Counted from the first letter of the stretch, positions 29,628-56,300 are shown. The stretch is DNA of 64,000 nucleotides from Macrostomum lignano (GCA_002269645.1 NIVC01001558.1:1-64000), one strand, 5' to 3'. Made by a program: numbers and translations. The notes: generated from the sequence alone by a model not told the origin.

Positions 29628-30995
29628 ATGTACTTCGTTCGCGCTTACGATCACGAGGATCATCGGTATCGAACTGACTATCGCGGTCAAACGGTGGTTC
29701 CAAGTTTCACTCTCGAATGTCAGGAAGATCACAGCTGTTACTTGGAAGGCTGTCAAAGAGTTGTAATCAACGTGTCAGGTGAAGTATTTGAAACGCAGTT
29801 AAAAACGCTCAATCGTTATCCGAACACTCTGCTTGGCAATGAGGCGAAACGCCTGGCCTATTGGGATCGCGCTCGATGTCATTTCTTTTTCGACCGTCAT
29901 CGACTCTCGTTTCCCGCCATATTGAACTTCTACCAGACTGGAGGAAAGCTGCGCAAGCCGCACGAAGTGCCAGAGGAGATCTTCTACGATGAATTGAAAT
30001 TCTTTGAAATTGACGAAAGCGTCATCCGCGACTTTTTGCTAACAGAAGGCTACACAATGCAAACTGTGCGCACAGTTGCGCAAACGAATTGGCGCACTCG
30101 GCTTTTCTCAGCGTTTGAATATCCAGATTCTTCGTTATTTGCTAGAACCATAGCAATGTTTAATGTGGCTGTTATTGCTCTAAGCATAGCGCTATTCTGC
30201 TTAGAAACTCTGCCAGCGAAATCTTCTCCAAAGTGTCCAACCCTCGTATCTGCCAAGCAACAGGGCCAATATCAGACTTTGGTTGCACCAGTGCCAACAA
30301 CTACGCCAATTCAGATTTCTCAGCCGTCGAAAACCTATGGATTTAATTGGTTCTTCATCTTAGAGACACTCTGCGTACTGTGGTTCAGTTTTGAGTTCGC
30401 CATCCGACTAGTAACATATCCTTTTCCTCGAAAAGCGTTTATGCTTTCCTTAGCGAATTGGCTCGATTTGGCCAGTATATTGCCGTTTATAGGATCCACA
30501 ATAATCCTGCACTTCACTGTGGACTGCTATGACCAGTGCCAGAAGGGCTCCATATTTCTCAATCTGCTTCGCTTTCTGAGAGTGTTTCGGATATTCAAGT
30601 TTTATAAATACGTCACTGGAATGAAAATTCTTGCTCGCACTCTGCGCATGAGTTTTCGCGAGATGACAATGTTTATATTATTTTTAACCATATGCATAGT
30701 ACTATTCGCCACGGCAATTTACTTTGCTGAAACTGGTAACGACCGTCTGCAGTTCAACAGCATACCTGACTCATTCTGGTGGGCCATCATCAGCATGTGT
30801 ACAGTCGGCTATGGCGACTATGTCCCGCGTAGTCTACCAGGAAAGCTTGTTGGCAGCATCTGTGTAGTGGCTGGCGTGATGACTATTGCCCTGCCAGTGC
30901 CGGTTATTGTCACAAACTTTAACATAGTGTATCGTCAAACACTACAGAAGCGATTTCGGCCAGAGCTGACTAGGGAGAAGCAGATACCGGTGTAG
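29628..30995 (+). CDS. Intronless Shaker (Kv1)-family voltage-gated potassium channel alpha subunit, 455 aa
   Basis: T1 domain (RVVINVSGEVFETQ, FFFDRHR..F.AILNFYQTGGKLRKP), S4 LRFLRVFRIFK, filter TVGYGD, PVP gate ALPVPVIVTNFN. Confidence 0.95.
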   Translation: MYFVRAYDHEDHRYRTDYRGQTVVPSFTLECQEDHSCYLEGCQRVVINVSGEVFETQLKTLNRYPNTLLGNEAKRLAYWDRARCHFFFDRHRLSFPAILNFYQTGGKLRKPHEVPEEIFYDELKFFEIDESVIRDFLLTEGYTMQTVRTVAQTNWRTRLFSAFEYPDSSLFARTIAMFNVAVIALSIALFCLETLPAKSSPKCPTLVSAKQQGQYQTLVAPVPTTTPIQISQPSKTYGFNWFFILETLCVLWFSFEFAIRLVTYPFPRKAFMLSLANWLDLASILPFIGSTIILHFTVDCYDQCQKGSIFLNLLRFLRVFRIFKFYKYVTGMKILARTLRMSFREMTMFILFLTICIVLFATAIYFAETGNDRLQFNSIPDSFWWAIISMCTVGYGDYVPRSLPGKLVGSICVVAGVMTIALPVPVIVTNFNIVYRQTLQKRFRPELTREKQIPV

Positions 30996-31199
30996 TCCAG
31001 CTAGGAACCCTTGACAGTGAAAAATTTTATTTAGTTAAATATTTGACGGCTATGTTAATTCTTCATAGTAAATTATGCCACAGCCTGTTTATTACCAGGT
31101 GCAGTTTTATTGAACCCCGTGTACTTTGTTCATGCAATCCTGAGCAAGCTTTAGCAGCCATAGAAATTTCATAAATAGCCAAATCAATATATTGTCATC

Positions 31200-39000: not shown

Positions 39001-39047
39001 AGGCGCAAAGCACACAATCGCACAAATTCACTTCAGCGTGACCAGTA

Positions 39048-39890
39048 ATGACGCGGCACTCCCGCAACAACACATCGCACAGTGTGTACACTTACCACGA
39101 GAAGCGTCGCGACGCCCAGGCCTCAGAGTACGGCACTAAGGAGGTCCGAGTCGGTCGGGACAGCGTCAAGAAATTCGACTGCTGCTGCCTGACTAATCAG
39201 CCGTGCAAAGATCCGGTGGTGACGCCCCAGGGCTACCTATACGACCGCGAGGCCATCCTGCAGTACATGCTGCAGCAGAGGCAGGAGCTGGTTAAGCAGG
39301 CCAAAGCGCGCGAACGCCAGCTGGCGGCCGAGGCGGCGCGCCAGGCGCAGGAACAGAGCAAGCAAGAGCACGAGACTGAGGTTAGCAAATACCTGAGCGC
39401 TAATACCGTGGCCAGCAGTCCGGATAAGAAGAAATCCGGCAGCGCCGAGCAGCCGGTCACGGCCTCCAACTTTTGGATACCCTCGGCCACGCCGTCCTCT
39501 TCTTCGGCGTCGTCCTCATCGACGGCGGCAAAGCCGGCACCGGCCCGACCGGACGACAAGGTCCGCTGTCCGATGTCTAAGAAGCCCCTGAGGCTGAAGG
39601 ATCTGATTTCCATTCAATTTAAACCCGCGCCCGGCGGCGGCTACCTGTGCGCCCTGACTGGCGATGTGTTGAACGATTCGACTCCGTTGTGCGTCATCCG
39701 GCCGTCCGGCTGCGTGGTCACCAAGGAGGCCGTCGACAAGCTGGTGCGGCCCGAGATGCGCGATCCGATCAGCGGGCGCGAGCTGACCCAGGCTGACATT
39801 GTGCAGCTGCAGAGGGGCGCTAGCGGCTTCGCTGGCAGCGGGCACAACCTGCTGTCTAAGCACACTGGCGTGGTTATGCATGTTGCTTGA
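39048..39890 (+). CDS. NOSIP: Nitric oxide synthase-interacting protein (E3 ligase), intronless CDS, 280 aa
   Basis: MTRHSRNNT.HSVYTYHEK, FDCCCLT.QPC.DPV.TPQGYLYDREAILQY and C-terminal DPISG.EL...DIVQLQRGASGF. Confidence 0.95.
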   Translation: MTRHSRNNTSHSVYTYHEKRRDAQASEYGTKEVRVGRDSVKKFDCCCLTNQPCKDPVVTPQGYLYDREAILQYMLQQRQELVKQAKARERQLAAEAARQAQEQSKQEHETEVSKYLSANTVASSPDKKKSGSAEQPVTASNFWIPSATPSSSSASSSSTAAKPAPARPDDKVRCPMSKKPLRLKDLISIQFKPAPGGGYLCALTGDVLNDSTPLCVIRPSGCVVTKEAVDKLVRPEMRDPISGRELTQADIVQLQRGASGFAGSGHNLLSKHTGVVMHVA

Positions 39891-39994
39891 CTAATACTCT
39901 GCTGCGCTTAACTGGCTTGCATTGTGGATTCCGGCTCCTCTCATCCTTAATCTGGGACTTTGTGTTGTTTAATGTAATGCTAATCTAAGCCGGA

Positions 39995-40185
39995 CTCTGA
40001 GAATGATCCTAAGACCGACTCTAAGGCTGACCTATAGACTGACTATAAGACTGACTTCAAGGCGGACCTATAGACTGACTATAAGACTGACTTCAAGGCG
40101 GACCTATAGACTGACTATAAGACTGACTTCAAGGCTGACCTTTAGACCGACTCTATGACTGACTCTAAGGCAGACCCTAAGGCTG
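39995..40185. repeat. 36-bp (3 x 12) minisatellite between NOSIP and PIG-U
   Basis: CTATAGACTGACTATAAGACTGACTTCAAGGCGGAC tandem copies. Confidence 0.85.
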
Positions 40186-40464
40186 GGTTACGAGTACTAT
40201 CAGGATGGGTGTTGTTAAGGCAACCCAGAATTTCAATTAACTTGCGATTGTCAACAGTTTGTATATGAATGGTATTATAATCTCTGTACAATTAAATTTT
40301 AAATACACTTGCAATTGACGGCAAATCCCATTTACTAAACATTTTACTACGCAGTAAAATAAAAAAATTATTTATTTGGCATTGTGGCCACATTTGACTG
40401 CCTAGTAACTGTAATTGCACACCTGTGCCAACCATTGTCAGTAAAACTGCCAACCAAACCGCAG

Positions 40465-41790
40465 GCGCTAACGGTATTCGGTCTGACTGCTCTGGAGTTG
40501 GCGCTGTGCTTAGCCGGCTGCCTCTGTCGTCTGGCTCTGCGCGCCTGGCTAACGCCGCAGTCCGTGCGCGCCTGGTCAAGCTCACCTGTGGAGTCCTGGA
40601 CAGCCGTGCGCGAGTACCTGGCCCTCCGTCGGGCCGGCGTCGATCCGTACGACGGCAGCGCGTTGCACTTGCCGCCGCTGTCGCTCCGGCTGATGCTGGC
40701 CGCCGACAGTCTGCTTGGCGGCGGCGACGGCGACCGAGCCTGGCTGGTGCTGCTCGCCCTGGAGCTAGCCGGCTGTCTAGCGCTCAAACGGTTGCTGCGC
40801 GAATTCGGCGCTTACACCCTGCGCCGACAGGCGGCCAACGTTGCCAGCTATTGCTCCGCCAGCGTCCCCATGCTGCTGTCCGGGGACAGCCTGCGCCGAC
40901 TGCGGCTTCCCGTCATTGCCGCCTACTGGTTCAATCCCTACAGTCTGGTGGCCTCAGTTGCCGAGGCAACCACGCCGCTTAGTAACCTGGTTGTCCTGCT
41001 CTGCCTAGCCGAGCTGTGCCGCGGTCGGGTCGGCTTCGCCGCCGCCTTGTGCGCGGCCGCCGCCTATCACGGCCTGTACCCGCTGTGCCTGATTGTGCCC
41101 ATCTGCCTGGCCGGCCCGGCCCGGCCCGCCCTGCTGGCCTTTGCTGGCACGCTGGCCTGCCTGCTGGCAGCTTCCTACATGCTGACTGGCGGCAGCTGGG
41201 CCTACCTGCAGTCTGTGTACGCCTTTCACGCTCTGGCGCCGGATCACACGCCCGGCTTCAGCCTGTCCTGGTACCTATTCTGCGAGGCGTTCGATCATTT
41301 TCGCAGCCTATTCCAGGCTGTGTTCCAGGCCAATCTGGTGTGCGTACTGGCCCCGCTGGCTATCAGATTCCGCTCCGATCCCTGCTTCCTAGCCGTGATC
41401 TGCTGGGCCTACACGGCTATATTCAAGCCCTACTGCTGCGTGTCTGAGCAGGCCCTGATAGCCTGTGTGTTCATCATGCACGCTCAGCTGCATGCTCACA
41501 TGCGCCGAGCTCTGCTAGCTATCATACTACTAATAGTAGCATTTGTACTGGCGCCAATCATGCACCATCTGTGGCTGTATCCGGGCAGTGCAAATTCCAA
41601 TTTCTACTTTGCCATCTCGCTGTTGCACTGCACAGCTATGGCCCTGCTGCTGTATCTATTCTGCATTGCCTATTTGAAACGGGAATTCCTACTGCATCAC
41701 GGGCCCCAGCCGTTGAAGTTTAGCGACGGCACCGAGGCTAAAATTGTGCTGCAGGCGCCAACAGTAAAACTGCTGTTTGTGAACAATTGA
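40465..41790 (+). CDS. PIGU: GPI transamidase component PIG-U; open frame with no genomic ATG before the conserved N-terminus
   Basis: SPVESW..VRE...GVDPYDGS.LH.PPL, YWFNPYS, PGFSLSWYLFCEAFDHFRSLF, LWLYPGSANSNFYFA; acceptor CCGCAG| at 40464 is phase 0; first in-frame ATG only at 40693. Confidence 0.92.
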   Translation, partial: ALTVFGLTALELALCLAGCLCRLALRAWLTPQSVRAWSSSPVESWTAVREYLALRRAGVDPYDGSALHLPPLSLRLMLAADSLLGGGDGDRAWLVLLALELAGCLALKRLLREFGAYTLRRQAANVASYCSASVPMLLSGDSLRRLRLPVIAAYWFNPYSLVASVAEATTPLSNLVVLLCLAELCRGRVGFAAALCAAAAYHGLYPLCLIVPICLAGPARPALLAFAGTLACLLAASYMLTGGSWAYLQSVYAFHALAPDHTPGFSLSWYLFCEAFDHFRSLFQAVFQANLVCVLAPLAIRFRSDPCFLAVICWAYTAIFKPYCCVSEQALIACVFIMHAQLHAHMRRALLAIILLIVAFVLAPIMHHLWLYPGSANSNFYFAISLLHCTAMALLLYLFCIAYLKREFLLHHGPQPLKFSDGTEAKIVLQAPTVKLLFVNN

Positions 41791-42167
41791 ATTCATTTTT
41801 CAGTCAAGTCTGCACTGTTAGCTACTGTATCCAATTTGTAGCCAAATTCTTAGTTTCACTCAGAATGTCTGTTTCTCATGCTCTGTTACAACGCTAATTT
41901 CGTTTCTTGTTTAGTAATTTTCTCTCTACTGCTTATCCTGTGCATTCTTTTGTAATGTCGCTTGAAAGCTGTCTGTCTGTCTGTCTTTATTTGTTATCTT
42001 TGCATTATTCTCTGTTTTATATTAGCTGCCATATTCACTGTTCCATAATTGTTCCTCTTGGAAATGCCTTGTTACACTATTCAAATAAATATACAGCAAC
42101 TAGTACAAGTTCATGCCTTTCTTGTCTCTTTGTGTTGCTCTTTATTTTACTTTATAGGTTTCGCATC

Positions 42168-43145
42168 TAACCTTCCAGTCTCTCAGTTCTACATGCATCT
42201 AACCTACCAGTCTCTCAGTTCTACATGCATCTAACCTTCCAGTCTCTCAGTTCTACATTCATCTAACCTTCCAGTCTCTCAGTTCTACATGCATCTAACC
42301 TTCCAGTCTCTCAGTTCTACATGCATCCAACCTTCCAGTCTCTCAGTTCTACATTCATCTAACCTTCCAGTCTCTCAGTTCTACATGCATCTAACCTTCC
42401 AGTCTCTCAGTTCTACATGCATCTAACCTTCCAGTCTCTCAGTTCTACATGCATCTAACCCTCCAGTCTCTCAGTTCTACATTCATCTAACCTTCCAGTC
42501 TCTCAGTTCTACATGCATCTAACCTTCCAGTCTCTCAGTTCTACATGCATCTAACCTTCCAGTCTCTCAGTTCTACATGCATCTAACCTTCCAGTCTCTC
42601 AGTTCTACATGCATCTAACCTTCCAGTCTCTCAGTTCTACATGCATCTAACCTTCCAGTCTGTCAGTTCTACATGCATCTAACCTTCCAGTCTGTCAGTT
42701 CTACATGCATCTAACCATCCAGTCTATCAGTTCTACATGCGTCTAACCATCCAGTCTGTCAGTTCTACATGCATCTAACCATCCAGTCTCTCAGTTCTAC
42801 ATTCATCTAACCTTTCAGTCTCTCAGTTCTACATTCATCTAACCTTCCAGTCTCTCAGTTCTACATGCATCTAACCTTCCAGTCTGTCAGTTCTACATGC
42901 ATCTAACCATCCAGTCTATCAGTTCTACATGCGTCTAACCATCCAGTCTGTCAGTTCTACATGCATCTAACCATCCAGTCTCTCAGTTGTACATGCATCT
43001 AACCATCCAGTCTATCAGTCATCCAGTCATCCAGTCTATGATAGGGTCTATCAGTTCTACATGCATTTAACCTTCCAGTCTCTCAGTTGTACAGTCATCT
43101 AACCTAACCCTCCAGTTTCTCAGTTCTACATGCATCTAACCCTCT
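42168..43145. repeat. 32-bp minisatellite (CTAACCTTCCAGTCTCTCAGTTCTACATGCAT), ~30 copies
   Basis: Direct tandem copies ending ~70 bp before the FAAH2 ATG. Confidence 0.97.
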
Positions 43146-43216
43146 AGTCATGCGATTAAAAGAAATCGCATGAAACTGTTTGCCAGTAGGTTAATCCGCT
43201 AATCCCCGCTGGTCTC

Positions 43217-44952
43217 ATGGCCAACCCATCTGCAGCCAGCCGCGACAGTCGCGTCGCTCTCAGCGACCGCCTGATTAGCATGGTGATGCGCGTTCTGCTT
43301 GGCACCATCCGCCCCCTGACCGGTATCTGCTTTGAAATTGTTTACCGACTGTTTGTGAAGCGTCGCCGAGTGCCGCCGCTGGAGAGCCCCCTGCTGGGCA
43401 TGTCGGCCGTGGCCCTGGCTGACGCTATCAGGCGCCGCGAGGTCACCAGCGAGGCCGTGGTGCGCGCCTCCATTGATCGAATGCGTTTGGTCCATCCGAT
43501 TATCAACGCCGTGGTGTGGGAGAGGTTAGCAATATCATATGCAATCTGATCTGTTATGAGCAGCTGGGCCAGGGCAGAAGTCTAAACGACGAAAAAACTG
43601 AAAGGGATTATCTGGGTCAAATAAATAAATGCCTGCTAGACACTGTTCAGGCAAGCTCAAGCATTGGATGCTAAGTTAAATATGAGTCAACTGTCACTTT
43701 GTCGGCAATCAGTTTGTTTGCAGTCAGTCTATCGGCAGTCTGTCTGTCTGCAGTCAGTCTATCTGCAGTCTGTCTCTGCAGTCAGTCTATCGGCAGTCTG
43801 GCTATTGGCAGTCTGTTTGTCTGCAGTCAGTCTATCGGCAGTCTGTCTGTCTGCAGTCAGTCTATCGGCAGTCTGGCTATTGGCAGTCAGTCTATCGGCA
43901 GTCTGGCTGTCTGCAGTCAGTCTATCGGCAGTCTGGCTGTCTGCAGTCAGTCTGTCTGCAGTCTGTTTGTCTGCAGTCAGTCTATCGGCAGTCTGTTTGT
44001 CTGCAGTCAGTCTATCGGCAGTCTGTTTGTCTGCAGTCAGTCTATCTGCAGTCAGTCTATCGGCAGTCTGGTAATTGCAGTCAGTCTGTCTGCAATCGGT
44101 CTATCGGCAGTCTGTCTGCCTGCAGTCAGTCCCAACACTGGCGGCCAGGCCAGGCCCAAAACGGCAACTATGTCCCCTTTCTCCCAGAAAGTAGTTTAAC
44201 AATTATTACGTCATCATTTGTAAGGGCCGAATAGAACATGTATTCACGTATTTATTTCTGCAGGTACGAAGCGGCCCTGCAGGACGCCAGGCGAGTTGAC
44301 GCTATGCTGGACTCCGACCCGGACAATCCCGAATGGAGCCGCGAGGCCAAGCCATTCCTGGGAGTGCCGGCCACCGTGAAGGAGGCCTTCGGCTTGGTTG
44401 GTGGCACCCAGTCTGTTGGCCTGTGGCTGCGCACCAGCATTCGCTCAGAGCGGGACGCTGTCTGCGTTGAACGAATGAAATCGGCCGGCTGCATCCCGCT
44501 GTGCCTCACCAACGTCAGCGAGCTGTGCATGTGGTGGGAGTCGCACAATCGGGTCAACGGCATCACTGGGAATCCCTACGATAGTAGGCGAATCGCCGGC
44601 GGCAGCAGCGGCGGCGAGGGTGCCAATGTGGGCGCCGGCTGCGCCCCGGTCGGCCTCGGCTCCGACATCGGCGGCAGCATCCGCATGCCGGCCTTCTTTA
44701 ACGGCGTATTCGGCCACAAGGCCACCGCCTACATGATCCCCAACGCGGGCCAGTACCCCGATGCCATAGCCGAGGGCCGCTACTTCATGCTTAGCGGCCC
44801 AATTGTAAGCCACGCCGAGGACCTGCTGCCCATGGTGCGCCTCATGGCCGGGCCCGAGAACTCCGCCCGGCTGCTCATCCGGCCGTCCGATCCCAGGCCG
44901 GACGTGAAACGGCTCAAGATCTACTATATGGAAGGTGAGCAGGTGGCATCTG

Positions 44953-53303: not shown

Positions 53304-56300
53304 TCACCGATAGCCATGGTAGTCGAGGTAACGGTAGGAGTCGGCCGCCATCAGCGCATTTGCCAACGCCTGCGATTTGCGCGAGCGCCTCAACGCCAGC
53401 CGGGTGATCCGGGCCCGCTGGCGCTCCAGCTTCTCCTCCTGACGGCGCTGCTCCTCCTTCCTGCGGAGCCATCTGGAGCGGGGAGGGGGAGGTGCAAGGA
53501 CCACTGCGTCATCTGCTTCAATTCCAGTCCAAGTGTTGTCCAAGGACCACTAGTGCGCAGCTATGTTAATCAGAGTTTAAAAAAACTGGGTTTTTTAAGC
53601 GTCACAATCACGGTGTCGTTAATTAAAAAAGTTTTGATACTTCAAATAATTATGCATTCTAGTTAAAATGCGGAGCTTGTATTAAATGGCTTGGAAACAA
53701 CTAGGTGCTAATTTCAAATTCAGGATGCACATGTACGAGAGTAGGACCAGCTCTGCACTGCATTAGGAATGCACGATGGCAGTTGTGACCCTGCGGTCTC
53801 AGCCCCCACCGTAGCCGCACCGTTTCCATGTAACCATGTGCGTGTTTGGATGTAACCATGTGTGTGTTTCCATGTAACCATGCGTGTGTTTCCATGTAAC
53901 CATGTGCGTGTTTGCATGTAACCATGTGTGTGTTTCCATGAAACCATGCGTGTGTTTGCATGTAACCATGCGTGTGTTTCCATGTAACCATGTGCGTGTT
54001 TGCATGTAACCATGCGTGTGTTTCCATGAAACCATGCGTGTGTTTGCATGTAACCATGCGTGTGTTTCCATGTAACCATGTGCGTGTTTGCATGTAACCA
54101 TGTGTGTGTTTCCATGTAACCATGCGTGTGTTTGCATGTAACCATGCGTGTGTTTCCATGTAACCATGTGCGTGTTTGCATGTAACCATGCGTTTGTTTC
54201 CATGTAACCATGCGTGTGTTTCCATGTAACCATGCGTGTGTTTGCATGTAACCATGTGCGTGTTTGCATGTAACCATGCGTGTGTTTCCATGTTACCATG
54301 TGCGTGTTTGCATGTAACCATGTGCGTGTTTGCATGTAACCATGCGTGTGTTTCCATGTAACCATGTGTGTTTGTTTCCATGTAACCATGTGTGTTTGTT
54401 TCCATGTGACTATGCGCGTGTTTGCATGTAACCATGTGCGTGTTTGTTTCCATGTAACTATGCGTGTGTTTGTTTCCATGTAACCATGCGCGTGTTTCCA
54501 TGTAACCATGCGTGTGTTTGCATGTAACCATGCGCGTGTTTCCATGTAACCATGCGCGTGTTTCCATGTAACCATGCGCGTGTTTCCATGTAACCATGCG
54601 CGTGTTTCCATGTAACCATGTGTTTGTTTCCATGTAACCACGTGCGTGTTTGCATGTAACCATGCGCGTGTTTCCATGTAACCATGTGTTTGTTTCCATG
54701 TAACCACGTGCGTGTTTCCATGTAACCATGCGCGTGTTTCCATGTAACCATGCGCGTGTTTCCATGTAACCATGAGTTTGTTTCCATGTAACCACGTGCG
54801 TGTTTCCATGTAACCATGCGCGTGTTTCCATGTAACCATGCGCGTGTTTCCATGTAACCATGCACGTGTTTCCATGTAACCACGAATACTCGGCCCTGCT
54901 CACTGCTTGAACGCCCGCCTGCAGTCCTCCTGCGAGTGCTGATCCGAGCCGCCTCTGCTGCCGGCCTCCTCTGCCTCCGGATCTTCGCCCCGTCGCCGAT
55001 GCTCCCGCTTGGCTGCCAGCCACTGCTCGAAGCTTATCCGGTCTTTCTCGCCGTCCCGTTGGCGTCGTCGTTCCTCATCGTCGCGCTCCGCCTGCTCCCG
55101 TTGGCGCCGCTCGTCCTCAGCTTTCTGACGCTTCCGAGCCAGCCAGGACTGATAGGCGGCCTCGTTGTCCTCCGGTGACTTGTCGTCGACAGACTTGGCG
55201 GAGGCCTGCCGCTGCCGCTGCCGCTGCTCGGCTTCGGTTCTCTGCTGCTCCCGCTTCCGTCGCAGCCAGGCGTCGAAAGCGGCCGAGTTCTCGCGCCGCC
55301 GCTCCTCGTCCTGTTCGTCTCGACGTCGCTGCTCCTCCGGACGGGCGGCCTTGGCGCTGCCGGCCCGATTGTTCTGCTGACGGTCGCCGCCGCCGCCACT
55401 TTGCCGATTCGCGGTTGACGAAGCCTTTGGTTGAGATTGAGTTTGGTTGCTCAGTTTGTTGAAACTTGTGCGGTTGCTATGCGGAAGGGACATACCAAGG
55501 ACTACTCAAGTAGAAGGACGGAAACTACGTTTCTTGGAAAATGTTAACAGGCAGGTTTTACCGAAAAATACATTAGGGATATCGGAGGTTTTCATTTGTT
55601 CAGCATAAAATTTGTTTTTGCTTTTGATAGGAGGCAGACCCAGTATTCATCTTTTAATATGACTTGCCTGTCTCAAAGTTCTACTGATATTTACAAAGTT
55701 TTTCGTTTAGAAAATTAGAATTCTATGTAAATTTTATATCCTACATACACGTTGTATACCTTAAAATCATAAAAATGGCACATCTCGACTCGTTGGTTCT
55801 ATGAATCTACTTTATCATTACGAGCTATGTTGCACATTTTGTTACTACGATTGCAAGTAGGATAAAAAACTAACATGAAAAATCCATAATGTAATGTATT
55901 GTTTTCGGTAAAACCTGCCTCCTAAAATTTTCCAAGAAACGTTGTTTTCCGTCCTTCTATTTGAGTGGATGGATTTGGAGAGGAGTTGGATGGTGGGATT
56001 GAGGTCATGGGATTCAGCTGATGTATTTCAGGGAATGGAATTCCGGTGATGGGAGTTCTTCCCCTTTCTCCTCCAAAGGAGGAGTTCCACTCGTACTACT
56101 ATAGTACTTCTTACTAAACGACGGCCTCCGCATGGGTTCGGCAATGCTATTGGTGTGTTGAATCGCTCAGCGACTTACCGACTTCGCCCGGGAATTCCTG
56201 CCGGACTTGGCGCCCTCGCCGGACTCTTCATCGTCGCTGATGTCGAATGCTTCGTCAGCCTCCACGTCGCTCTTGTTGACATAGCGAATTTTTCCGTCGT

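What the first reader, a model, noticed from the sequence alone, without database searches (positions are those of the whole stretch)
40260..40700. PIG-U has no genomic start codon; candidate spliced-leader-donated AUG
Seen: the frame is open and PIG-U-like from ~40465, but the first in-frame ATG (40693) lies after the conserved SP..SW and GVDPYDG motifs. An acceptor CCGCAG| at 40464 is exactly phase 0. Known: flatworm spliced leaders end in AUG, and this AUG can act as the initiator. Inference: SL-AUG + GCG CTA ACG gives MALTVFGLTALELAL..., about the usual PIG-U N-terminal length. Alternative: a cis exon ending ATG|GTATTA at ~40269-40271 (weak donor).
Basis: partly seen in the sequence, partly recalled or inferred. 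Interest (0 to 1): 0.72.

Follow-up and report, generated by a model that had tools for sequence, protein, structure and literature searches.

The report
PIG-U start codon from spliced leader
In the flatworm Macrostomum lignano the gene for the GPI-transamidase subunit PIG-U has no start codon of its own and most likely takes it from the AUG ending the trans-spliced leader, a mechanism already known in flatworms, so this is a tidy new example rather than a new phenomenon.

Summary
The window is Macrostomum lignano contig NIVC01001558.1, bases 1-64000. An intronless PIG-U frame runs from 40363 to TGA at 41788-90. No ATG occurs in any frame from 40272 to 40692. The first in-frame ATG, at 40693 (codon 77), lies after the first transmembrane helix and the SPVESW and GVDPYDG motifs. 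A CAG| acceptor ends at 40464, in phase 0.

- The single published 35-nt spliced leader (SL) of M. lignano ends in ATG.
- The three annotated assembly copies are all 5'-partial. Their coding sequences start at the equivalents of 40465, 40468 and 40501, although the frame is open 102 nt further upstream. The annotated mRNA 5' ends therefore lie at or just after an acceptor.
- The gene sits in a same-strand cluster (SPC25, NOSIP, PIG-U, amidase, ALKBH), with an AATAAA about 100 nt upstream of the acceptor.
- Copies differ at three sites in codons 1-76, and all three changes are synonymous.
- Starting at 40465 gives the usual PIG-U N-terminal length.
- No upstream cis donor is convincing.

No SL-junction reads could be reached, and 40497|40498 is a second phase-0 candidate. 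SL-AUG initiation has been documented since 2006, so novelty is modest. By-product: SL-like letters at trans-splice junctions in some assembly copies look like artefacts of RNA-seq polishing.

The parts
39048..39890 (+). NOSIP coding sequence (280 aa, intronless), the upstream same-strand neighbour
   Evidence: ORF list. Pfam zf-NOSIP E=1e-33. Annotated gene.
39891..40385 (+). Probable NOSIP 3' UTR. The 3' limit is inferred.
   Evidence: Tandem repeat. Poly(A) hexamer scan. The end point is inferred from the AATAAA position, not from reads.
40358..40363 (+). AATAAA poly(A) signal, followed by a T/GT-rich stretch. It lies 101 nt upstream of the acceptor.
   Evidence: The spacing matches the roughly 100-bp modal intergenic distance reported for M. 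lignano operons (PMC8629364).
40386..40464 (+). Intercistronic segment (outron). It is AT-richer and has no ATG. The copies carry indels in a T-run just upstream, at about 40370-76.
40459..40464 (+). Candidate SL trans-splice acceptor CCGCAG| (junction 40464|40465, phase 0). It has one mismatch to the published YTNCAG motif.
   Evidence: Motif from PMC8629364. The annotated partial coding sequence of copy L002 (PAA76974.1, Mlig016610g4) begins at the next base, and that of L001 begins 3 nt later.
40465..41790 (+). PIG-U coding sequence without an initiator: 441 codons plus TGA, intronless. With the SL AUG it gives 442 aa, MALTVFGLTALELAL...
40465..40692 (+). Codons 1-76. They encode a hydrophobic first transmembrane segment (mean hydropathy 1.5-1.9 over residues 1-31), then SPVESW and GVDPYDG. 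All of this precedes any genomic in-frame ATG.
   Evidence: Three differences between copies fall here and all are synonymous.
40492..40497 (+). Second candidate acceptor CTGGAG| (junction 40497|40498, also phase 0). The SL AUG would then give MLALCLAG...
   Evidence: The annotated partial coding sequence on this contig (P0007) starts at 40501.
40693..40695 (+). First genomic in-frame ATG (codon 77). Starting here would remove the first transmembrane helix and the conserved luminal motif.

Best explanation
PIG-U is an internal gene of a same-strand, SL-resolved gene cluster in Macrostomum lignano: SPC25, NOSIP, PIG-U, amidase, ALKBH-like.

The proposed sequence of events is as follows.
1. The NOSIP mRNA is cleaved after the AATAAA at 40358.
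2. About 80-100 nt downstream, the spliceosome joins the 35-nt spliced leader (...TTATTGCATG) to the acceptor CAG| at 40464.
3. The mature PIG-U mRNA reads cap, 32 nt, AUG|GCG CUA ACG. The leader's terminal AUG is the first AUG on the mRNA and is in frame with the PIG-U ORF with no intervening stop.
4. Scanning ribosomes start at that AUG and make a 442-aa protein, MALTVFG..., whose first residues form the first transmembrane helix.

Shown:
- the sequence facts;
- the identity of the organism and its SL;
- PIG-U homology and N-terminal colinearity;
- annotated mRNA 5' ends at or just after the acceptor;
- the operon-like context.

Inferred:
- that SL reads really join at 40465;
- that translation starts at the SL AUG.
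For: 1. The organism is M. lignano, assembly GCA_002269645.1. The window equals NIVC01001558.1:1-64000.

2. Its single SL, CGGTCTCTTACTGCGAAGACTCAATTTATTGCATG, ends in ATG (PMC8629364). PMC10468722 calls this ATG a likely translation start codon. In Schistosoma mansoni more than 40 cDNAs need the SL AUG (Cheng 2006, as summarised in PMC9851317).

3. Annotation. 5' ends inside transcriptional units are cut at peaks of SL-trimmed reads (PMC5730564).
- All three annotated copies are 5'-partial, starting at the equivalents of 40465 (PAA76974.1, 'Mlig016610g4, partial'), 40468 and 40501.
- The frame is open back to 40363. A partial coding sequence starting at these positions therefore means the annotated mRNA begins within 2 nt of them.
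- None of these mRNAs contains an AUG before codon 77.

4. Context. Five same-strand genes lie together. An AATAAA sits 101 nt upstream of the acceptor, matching the roughly 100-bp operon spacing reported.

5. The N-terminus is real coding sequence.
- It is covered by the Pfam and human PIGU alignments.
- Three of three copy differences in codons 1-76 are synonymous, and 7 of 8 over the whole coding sequence.
- GC content and GC3 rise at 40465-95.
- The first 31 residues are hydrophobic.

6. N-terminal length. I computed offsets by hand from the table. Among 58 homologues aligned from their N-terminal part, the median offset (homologue start minus query start) is -2 residues, and 46 of 58 lie within +/-10. 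No further upstream exon is therefore expected.

7. No phase-compatible upstream donor matches more than 5 of 9 consensus positions, and none has GTRAG.
Against: - No SL-junction read or SL-bearing transcript for this gene could be reached. Exact look-ups of MALTVFG... and related proteins, paper supplements, and a scan for the junction sequence all found nothing.
- The three annotated 5' ends disagree. The one on this contig (40501) is 36 nt downstream of the proposed junction.
- Annotated 5' ends can be a few nt off. For NOSIP the annotated end is 3-5 nt after its junction.
- The acceptor CCGCAG has one mismatch to YTNCAG, and its upstream tract is A/C-rich rather than pyrimidine-rich.
- The position -3 context of the SL AUG is U, which is not optimal.
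Confidence: 0.75

Rival explanations
1. The mechanism is the same but the junction differs. The SL is joined at GAG| (40497|40498), also in phase 0, giving MLALCLAGCLCRL..., which is 11 residues shorter. This site might be the main one or an alternative one.
For: The annotated partial coding sequence on this very contig begins at 40501, 1-3 nt after that AG. Offsets of 1-5 nt between annotated 5' end and junction are seen elsewhere, in PIG-U copy L001 and in NOSIP. CTGGAG fits the Y-T-N part of the motif. The resulting 30 residues before the SP motif still fall within the range seen in homologues.
Against: G at position -3 is the least favoured acceptor base. Two sister copies with identical sequence here are annotated from 40465 and 40468. 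Starting at 40465 fits the family's N-terminal length better: the median offset is -2, against about +9 for 40498. It would also shorten the first transmembrane helix.
Confidence: 0.12
2. A cis-spliced 5' exon in the NOSIP-PIG-U spacer supplies the ATG, for example ATG|GTATTA at 40269-71 joined to 40465.
For: One phase-compatible ATG-plus-GT exists, and the 193-nt intron would be of plausible size.
Against: All seven candidate donors match only 3-5 of 9 consensus positions, and none has the GT[GA]AG that dominates M. lignano donors. The site lies upstream of the AATAAA at 40358, inside the probable NOSIP 3' UTR. No annotated PIG-U copy extends upstream of 40465.
Confidence: 0.04
3. There is no SL-AUG initiation. 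Translation starts at the genomic ATG at 40693 (codon 77) or at a near-cognate codon, or the locus is a decaying pseudogene.
For: ATG 40693 is the first AUG of any non-trans-spliced mRNA that begins near 40465. In-frame near-cognate codons (CTG, TTG, GTG) exist in 40384-40449.
Against: Codons 1-76 carry the first transmembrane helix and the most conserved PIG-U motifs. They show only synonymous differences between copies, and 7 of 8 differences over the whole coding sequence are synonymous. The ORF is intact over 441 codons in all copies. The annotated mRNAs do not include the near-cognate codons upstream of 40465.
Confidence: 0.06
4. An assembly or base error hides a genomic ATG.
For: The assembly is PacBio-based and was polished. 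T-run lengths vary between copies at about 40370-76.
Against: Four copies on three contigs agree base for base from 40377 to 40529. All three frames carry stops between 40272 and 40464. RNA-seq polishing would tend to create SL-like ATGs, not remove them.
Confidence: 0.02

Closest known systems
Schistosoma mansoni mRNAs that use the spliced leader's 3'-terminal AUG as initiator (Cheng, Cohen, Ndegwa and Davis, J Biol Chem 2006; summarised in PMC9851317 and PMC12582326)
   Same: A flatworm SL ending in AUG is joined in frame to an ORF that lacks its own initiator for the conserved N-terminus. The SL AUG is the first AUG on the mRNA.
   Different: The species is a free-living macrostomorph and the SL sequence is different. 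Trans-splicing and initiation are inferred here, not shown by cDNA or translation assays. The gene sits in an operon-like cluster.
slORFs, open reading frames created by SL addition (slORFfinder, PMC9851317)
   Same: The SL supplies the start codon, so genome-only annotation misses the ORF or truncates it.
   Different: Most slORFs described there are new or out-of-frame ORFs, or use NUG codons in nematodes, Oikopleura and trypanosomes. Here the SL AUG completes a conserved housekeeping protein.
SL-resolved operons of M. lignano (Ustyantsev and Berezikov 2021, PMC8629364) and of C. elegans
   Same: Neighbours lie on the same strand. There is a poly(A) signal about 100 nt upstream of the next gene's trans-splice acceptor. 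Tandem repeats inflate the intergenic distances.
   Different: M. lignano has one SL for all positions, with no SL1/SL2 split. That paper did not address SL-AUG use.
Human PIGU in the GPI-transamidase complex (PDB 7WLD, 8IMX, 7W72) and yeast GAB1 (9UB7)
   Same: Full-length homology (E about 1e-51). It has the same N-terminal transmembrane helix followed by the SP..SW / G..PY.G motif.
   Different: The gene is intronless here and has no genomic start codon.

Membership tests
Flatworm mRNA initiated at the SL 3'-terminal AUG | The organism trans-splices an SL whose last three bases are AUG | tested here: met
   Organism identified as M. lignano. The SL sequence ending in ATG is from PMC8629364. 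PMC10468722 concurs.
Flatworm mRNA initiated at the SL 3'-terminal AUG | This mRNA receives the SL at the stated acceptor | tested here: inconclusive
   The evidence is indirect only. Annotated 5'-partial coding sequences start at the equivalents of 40465, 40468 and 40501, in an annotation whose internal 5' ends come from SL reads. No reads or SL-bearing transcripts could be reached.
Flatworm mRNA initiated at the SL 3'-terminal AUG | The junction puts the SL AUG in frame with the main ORF with no intervening stop | tested here: met
   40465 begins a codon of the PIG-U frame, giving AUG|GCG CUA ACG. The same holds for 40498.
Flatworm mRNA initiated at the SL 3'-terminal AUG | No genomic in-frame AUG can yield the conserved N-terminus | tested here: met
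   There is an upstream in-frame stop at 40360-62. There is no ATG in any frame from 40272 to 40692. The first in-frame ATG is codon 77, after the conserved motifs.
Flatworm mRNA initiated at the SL 3'-terminal AUG | Translation actually starts at the SL AUG | not testable with these tools
   This needs ribosome profiling, N-terminal proteomics or a reporter assay.
PIG-U / GAB1 (Pfam PF06728) | Full-length match to the family profile above the curated cut-off | tested here: met
   259 bits against a cut-off of 24.5, covering profile positions 6-377 of 378. 1075 homologues at E<=1e-3.
PIG-U / GAB1 (Pfam PF06728) | Homology to experimentally solved GPI-transamidase PIGU chains, including the N-terminal region | tested here: met
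   8imx_U and 7wld_U at E about 1e-51, query residues 11-438.
SL-resolved operon (criteria of PMC8629364) | Adjacent same-strand genes with a repeat-adjusted spacing under 1 kb | tested here: met
   From the NOSIP stop at 39890 to the acceptor at 40464 is 574 nt, including a 167-nt repeat. PIG-U to the amidase is 1.43 kb, of which 987 nt is a 32-bp tandem array.
SL-resolved operon (criteria of PMC8629364) | The downstream gene is SL trans-spliced and the genes share one primary transcript | tested here: inconclusive
   The locus tag Mlig016610g4 indicates a fourth gene cut out of one transcriptional unit. No read-level data were available.

The most novel reading that the evidence does not exclude
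Loss of the genomic start codon may be common among conserved, operon-embedded genes of M. lignano.

In this one cluster two neighbours, PIG-U and the amidase, appear to depend on the SL AUG. This would make trans-splicing obligatory for their expression.

The public Mlig_3_7 assembly may partly hide the pattern. RNA-seq-based polishing seems to have written the SL's last letters, including 'ATG', over true acceptor sites.
Probability: 0.35. Interest if true: 0.45.

Novelty: new member of a known kind. Interest (0 to 1): 0.3.

Why it matters
It turns a protein flagged 'partial' in GenBank (PAA76974.1 and its sister copies) into a complete 442-aa PIG-U. It also gives a concrete, testable example of SL-AUG initiation in a free-living flatworm that can be made transgenic.

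For annotators, 5'-partial models in M. lignano that begin right after an acceptor should be tested with the SL AUG prepended.

For people designing M. lignano reporters, outron-containing promoter fragments of such genes need no ATG of their own. They will be read from the SL AUG.

It does not change what is known about the mechanism.

Tried and rejected
- Exact look-ups of MALTVFG... (442 aa, two allelic forms), MLALCLAG... and the Met77-start protein found nothing in the 15-billion-protein collection.
- The homology search returned only the three genome-derived copies and distant homologues, with no transcript-derived proteins.
- Supplements of PMC5816591 and PMC5173321 have no entry for Mlig016610, PIGU or NOSIP. 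A full-text search for 'Mlig016610' gave 0 papers.
- A scan of metagenome contigs for the predicted junction TGCATG|GCGCTAACGGTATTCGG gave 0 hits.
- The window was searched for an SL RNA gene or longer SL suffixes. No match of 10 nt or more was found, and the 7-9-nt matches are not followed by ORFs and look random.
- An attempt to list all clustered substitutions between copies, to quantify SL 'footprints', was swamped by tandem-repeat misalignment and abandoned.
- A look-up of the Kv-channel ORF, meant to tile more of the window's annotation, failed because no such exact protein is on record.
- An unspliced N-terminal extension was rejected. The upstream part of the frame is AT-rich, the copies carry indels of 1 and 4 nt there, and all frames have stops.

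Full report
**What is in the sequence**

The region 40260-40700 spans the end of one gene's 3' UTR, a short spacer and the start of the next gene.

- In the frame of 40465 there is a TAA at 40360-62. The frame then stays open for 1,428 nt to TGA at 41788-90.
- The product from 40465 is a full-length, intronless PIG-U. It matches Pfam PF06728 at E=8e-77, with residue 21 aligned to profile position 6 of 378.
- It also matches solved human PIGU chains (8imx, 7wld) at E about 1e-51, from query residue 11.
- A scan of all ATGs shows none in any frame between 40272 and 40692. The first in-frame ATG is at 40693, codon 77.
- That codon lies after the hydrophobic first transmembrane segment, SPVESW (40582-99) and GVDPYDG (40636-56).
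- CCGCAG| ends at 40464 and the next base starts a codon.

**Which organism, and what the public annotation says**

Exact-protein look-ups place the ORF in Macrostomum lignano assembly GCA_002269645.1 (Mlig_3_7), on three contigs. The window is NIVC01001558.1:1-64000.

All three annotated proteins lack an initiator Met.
- PAA76974.1 ('BOX15_Mlig016610g4, partial') begins ALTVFG, exactly at the 40465 equivalent.
- A second copy begins LTVFG, at 40468.
- The copy on this contig begins ALCLAG, at 40501.

The frame is open 102 nt further upstream. A 5'-partial ORF starting at these positions therefore means the annotated mRNA begins within 2 nt of them.

In this annotation, transcriptional units were cut into genes at peaks of SL-trimmed reads and at poly(A) sites (PMC5730564). 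The tag 'g4' marks the fourth gene cut out of one unit.

These 5' ends can be a few nt off. NOSIP is annotated from 39042, which implies an mRNA start at 39040-42, 3-5 nt after its junction at 39036|39037.

**The spliced leader**

- M. lignano has one described SL, CGGTCTCTTACTGCGAAGACTCAATTTATTGCATG. About 30% of its genes are trans-spliced and 15% lie in operons.
- The acceptor motif is [T/C]TNCAG, and the modal repeat-adjusted spacing between operon genes is about 100 bp (PMC8629364).
- In Schistosoma mansoni the SL AUG is in frame in 28% of trans-spliced transcripts, and more than 40 cDNAs need it (Cheng et al. 2006, as summarised in PMC9851317; see also PMC12582326).

**Context**

Five genes lie on the + strand: SPC25, NOSIP, PIG-U, an amidase and an ALKBH-like oxygenase.

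NOSIP stops at 39890. An AATAAA sits at 40358-63, followed by a T/GT-rich stretch, 101 nt upstream of the acceptor. This is the architecture expected for a downstream gene of an SL-resolved operon.

I enumerated every ATG in the spacer together with every phase-compatible GT. The seven candidate donors match 3-5 of 9 consensus positions, and none has GTRAG.

**Is the N-terminus really translated?**

- The copies differ at eight coding-sequence sites, and seven of the changes are synonymous. The three sites in codons 1-76 are all synonymous third-position changes.
- Upstream of the acceptor, the copies carry 1- and 4-nt indels in a T-run.
- GC content rises from 0.47 or less to 0.57-0.77 at 40465. 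In-frame GC3 rises at 40495.
- I took offsets by hand from the table of the exhaustive profile-free search. Among 58 homologues aligned from their N-terminal part, the median offset between homologue and query start is -2 residues, and 46 lie within +/-10.
- An ORF beginning at 40465 therefore already has the usual PIG-U N-terminal length, and no further exon is expected.

**Most likely mechanism (confidence about 0.75)**

1. The SL is joined at 40464|40465.
2. Its AUG is the first AUG on the mRNA, 32 nt from the cap, followed by G at position +4, and in frame.
3. Translation gives MALTVFGLTALELAL..., 442 aa.

Trans-splicing at this base and initiation at the SL AUG are inferred, not observed.

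The main variant is a junction at GAG| 40497|40498. It is also in phase 0 and is suggested by the annotation of this contig. It is disfavoured by G at position -3, by the two sister annotations, and by N-terminal length.

The other readings are each unlikely for the reasons above:
- a cis-spliced upstream exon;
- initiation at Met77 or at a non-AUG codon;
- a base error.

**What could not be done**

No SL-bearing read or transcript for this gene was reachable. Mapping SL-containing reads from the public RNA-seq sets would settle the junction in minutes.

**By-products**

The assembly was polished with Pilon using RNA-seq as well as DNA reads (PMC5730564). Consistent with that, SL 3'-end letters sit in the genome exactly at junctions in some copies.
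- NOSIP reads ...AAATTCACTTCAG|CGTGACC in three copies but ...AAATTCATGCATG|CGTGACC in NIVC01000774.1.
- The amidase coding sequence is annotated from GCC at 43220 in all copies. It is preceded by CATG, with no AG. In one copy it is preceded by TTGCATG, which is 7 nt of the SL.
- The 'genomic' ATG at 43217 may therefore be an SL footprint, and the amidase may be a second SL-AUG-initiated gene (MANPSAAS...).
- For NOSIP the SL AUG opens a 4-codon ORF (MRDQ) whose UAA overlaps the main AUG as UAAUG.

**Verdict**

The mechanism has been known since 2006 and has been acknowledged for Macrostomum. This is a new, well-documented member of a known kind, of modest interest (0.3). Its main use is for annotation and reporter design.

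Noticed in passing
window 43213-43220; L001 6557-6566; L002/L005 equivalent: The amidase coding sequence (535 aa) is annotated from GCC at 43220 in all three copies, one codon after the 'genomic' ATG at 43217. There is no AG before 43220. The preceding letters are TCTCATG here and TTGCATG (7 nt of the SL 3' end) in copy L001. The assembly was polished with RNA-seq (PMC5730564). The ATG may therefore be an SL footprint written over the true acceptor, and the amidase may be a second SL-AUG-initiated gene (MANPSAAS...).
   Followed up: partly
window 39030-39050; L002 about 1627-1657: The NOSIP acceptor ACTTCAG| (39036|39037, a perfect YTNCAG) reads ATGCATG| in copy NIVC01000774.1. Five substitutions in 7 nt recreate the SL's TGCATG. 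With the SL attached, AUG CGU GAC CAG UAA forms a 4-codon ORF whose stop overlaps the NOSIP AUG (UAAUG).
   Followed up: partly
window 31124-31138 (minus strand); L005 about 1195-1210: On the minus strand the window reads GGATTGCATG|AACAAAG where copy L005 reads GGATTGCAG|AAACAAAG, a perfect TTGCAG acceptor. This may be another SL footprint marking a divergent, trans-spliced minus-strand transcript upstream of SPC25.
   Followed up: no
window 40353-40357, 40404-40408, 40440-40444; also 43185-43189: All three AG dinucleotides between the NOSIP poly(A) signal and the PIG-U acceptor are followed by TAA. The cag| upstream of the amidase is followed by TAG. If used as acceptors, the SL AUG would meet a stop at once. 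The base rate of AG followed by a stop codon in the window is 6.5%, so three of three is unusual, but the comparison is post hoc.
   Followed up: partly
window 29628-30995 (+), Rfam hit 30804-30917: An intronless Shaker-type voltage-gated K+ channel ORF (455 aa) carries a match to Rfam RF00485, the 'potassium channel RNA editing signal' (63.5 bits against a gathering score of 51). The match lies over the S6 / pore-lining coding region. It could reflect coding conservation or a conserved ADAR-editing hairpin in a flatworm.
   Followed up: no
window 40010-40176; 42163-43149; 53912-54650: Long tandem arrays fill the spaces between the clustered genes: 36 bp x 4.6 in the NOSIP 3' UTR, with copy number varying between assembly copies, and 32 bp x 30.6 between PIG-U and the amidase. 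A roughly 44-bp-spaced array containing TTGCATG lies at 53.9-54.7 kb. This fits the published remark that repeats inflate operon spacers in this genome.
   Followed up: partly
window 39048-39890 and 40465-41790: NOSIP and PIG-U are both intronless here, whereas the neighbouring SPC25, amidase and ALKBH-like genes have introns. No poly(A) or SL relic flanks them, so there is no sign of recent retroposition.
   Followed up: no
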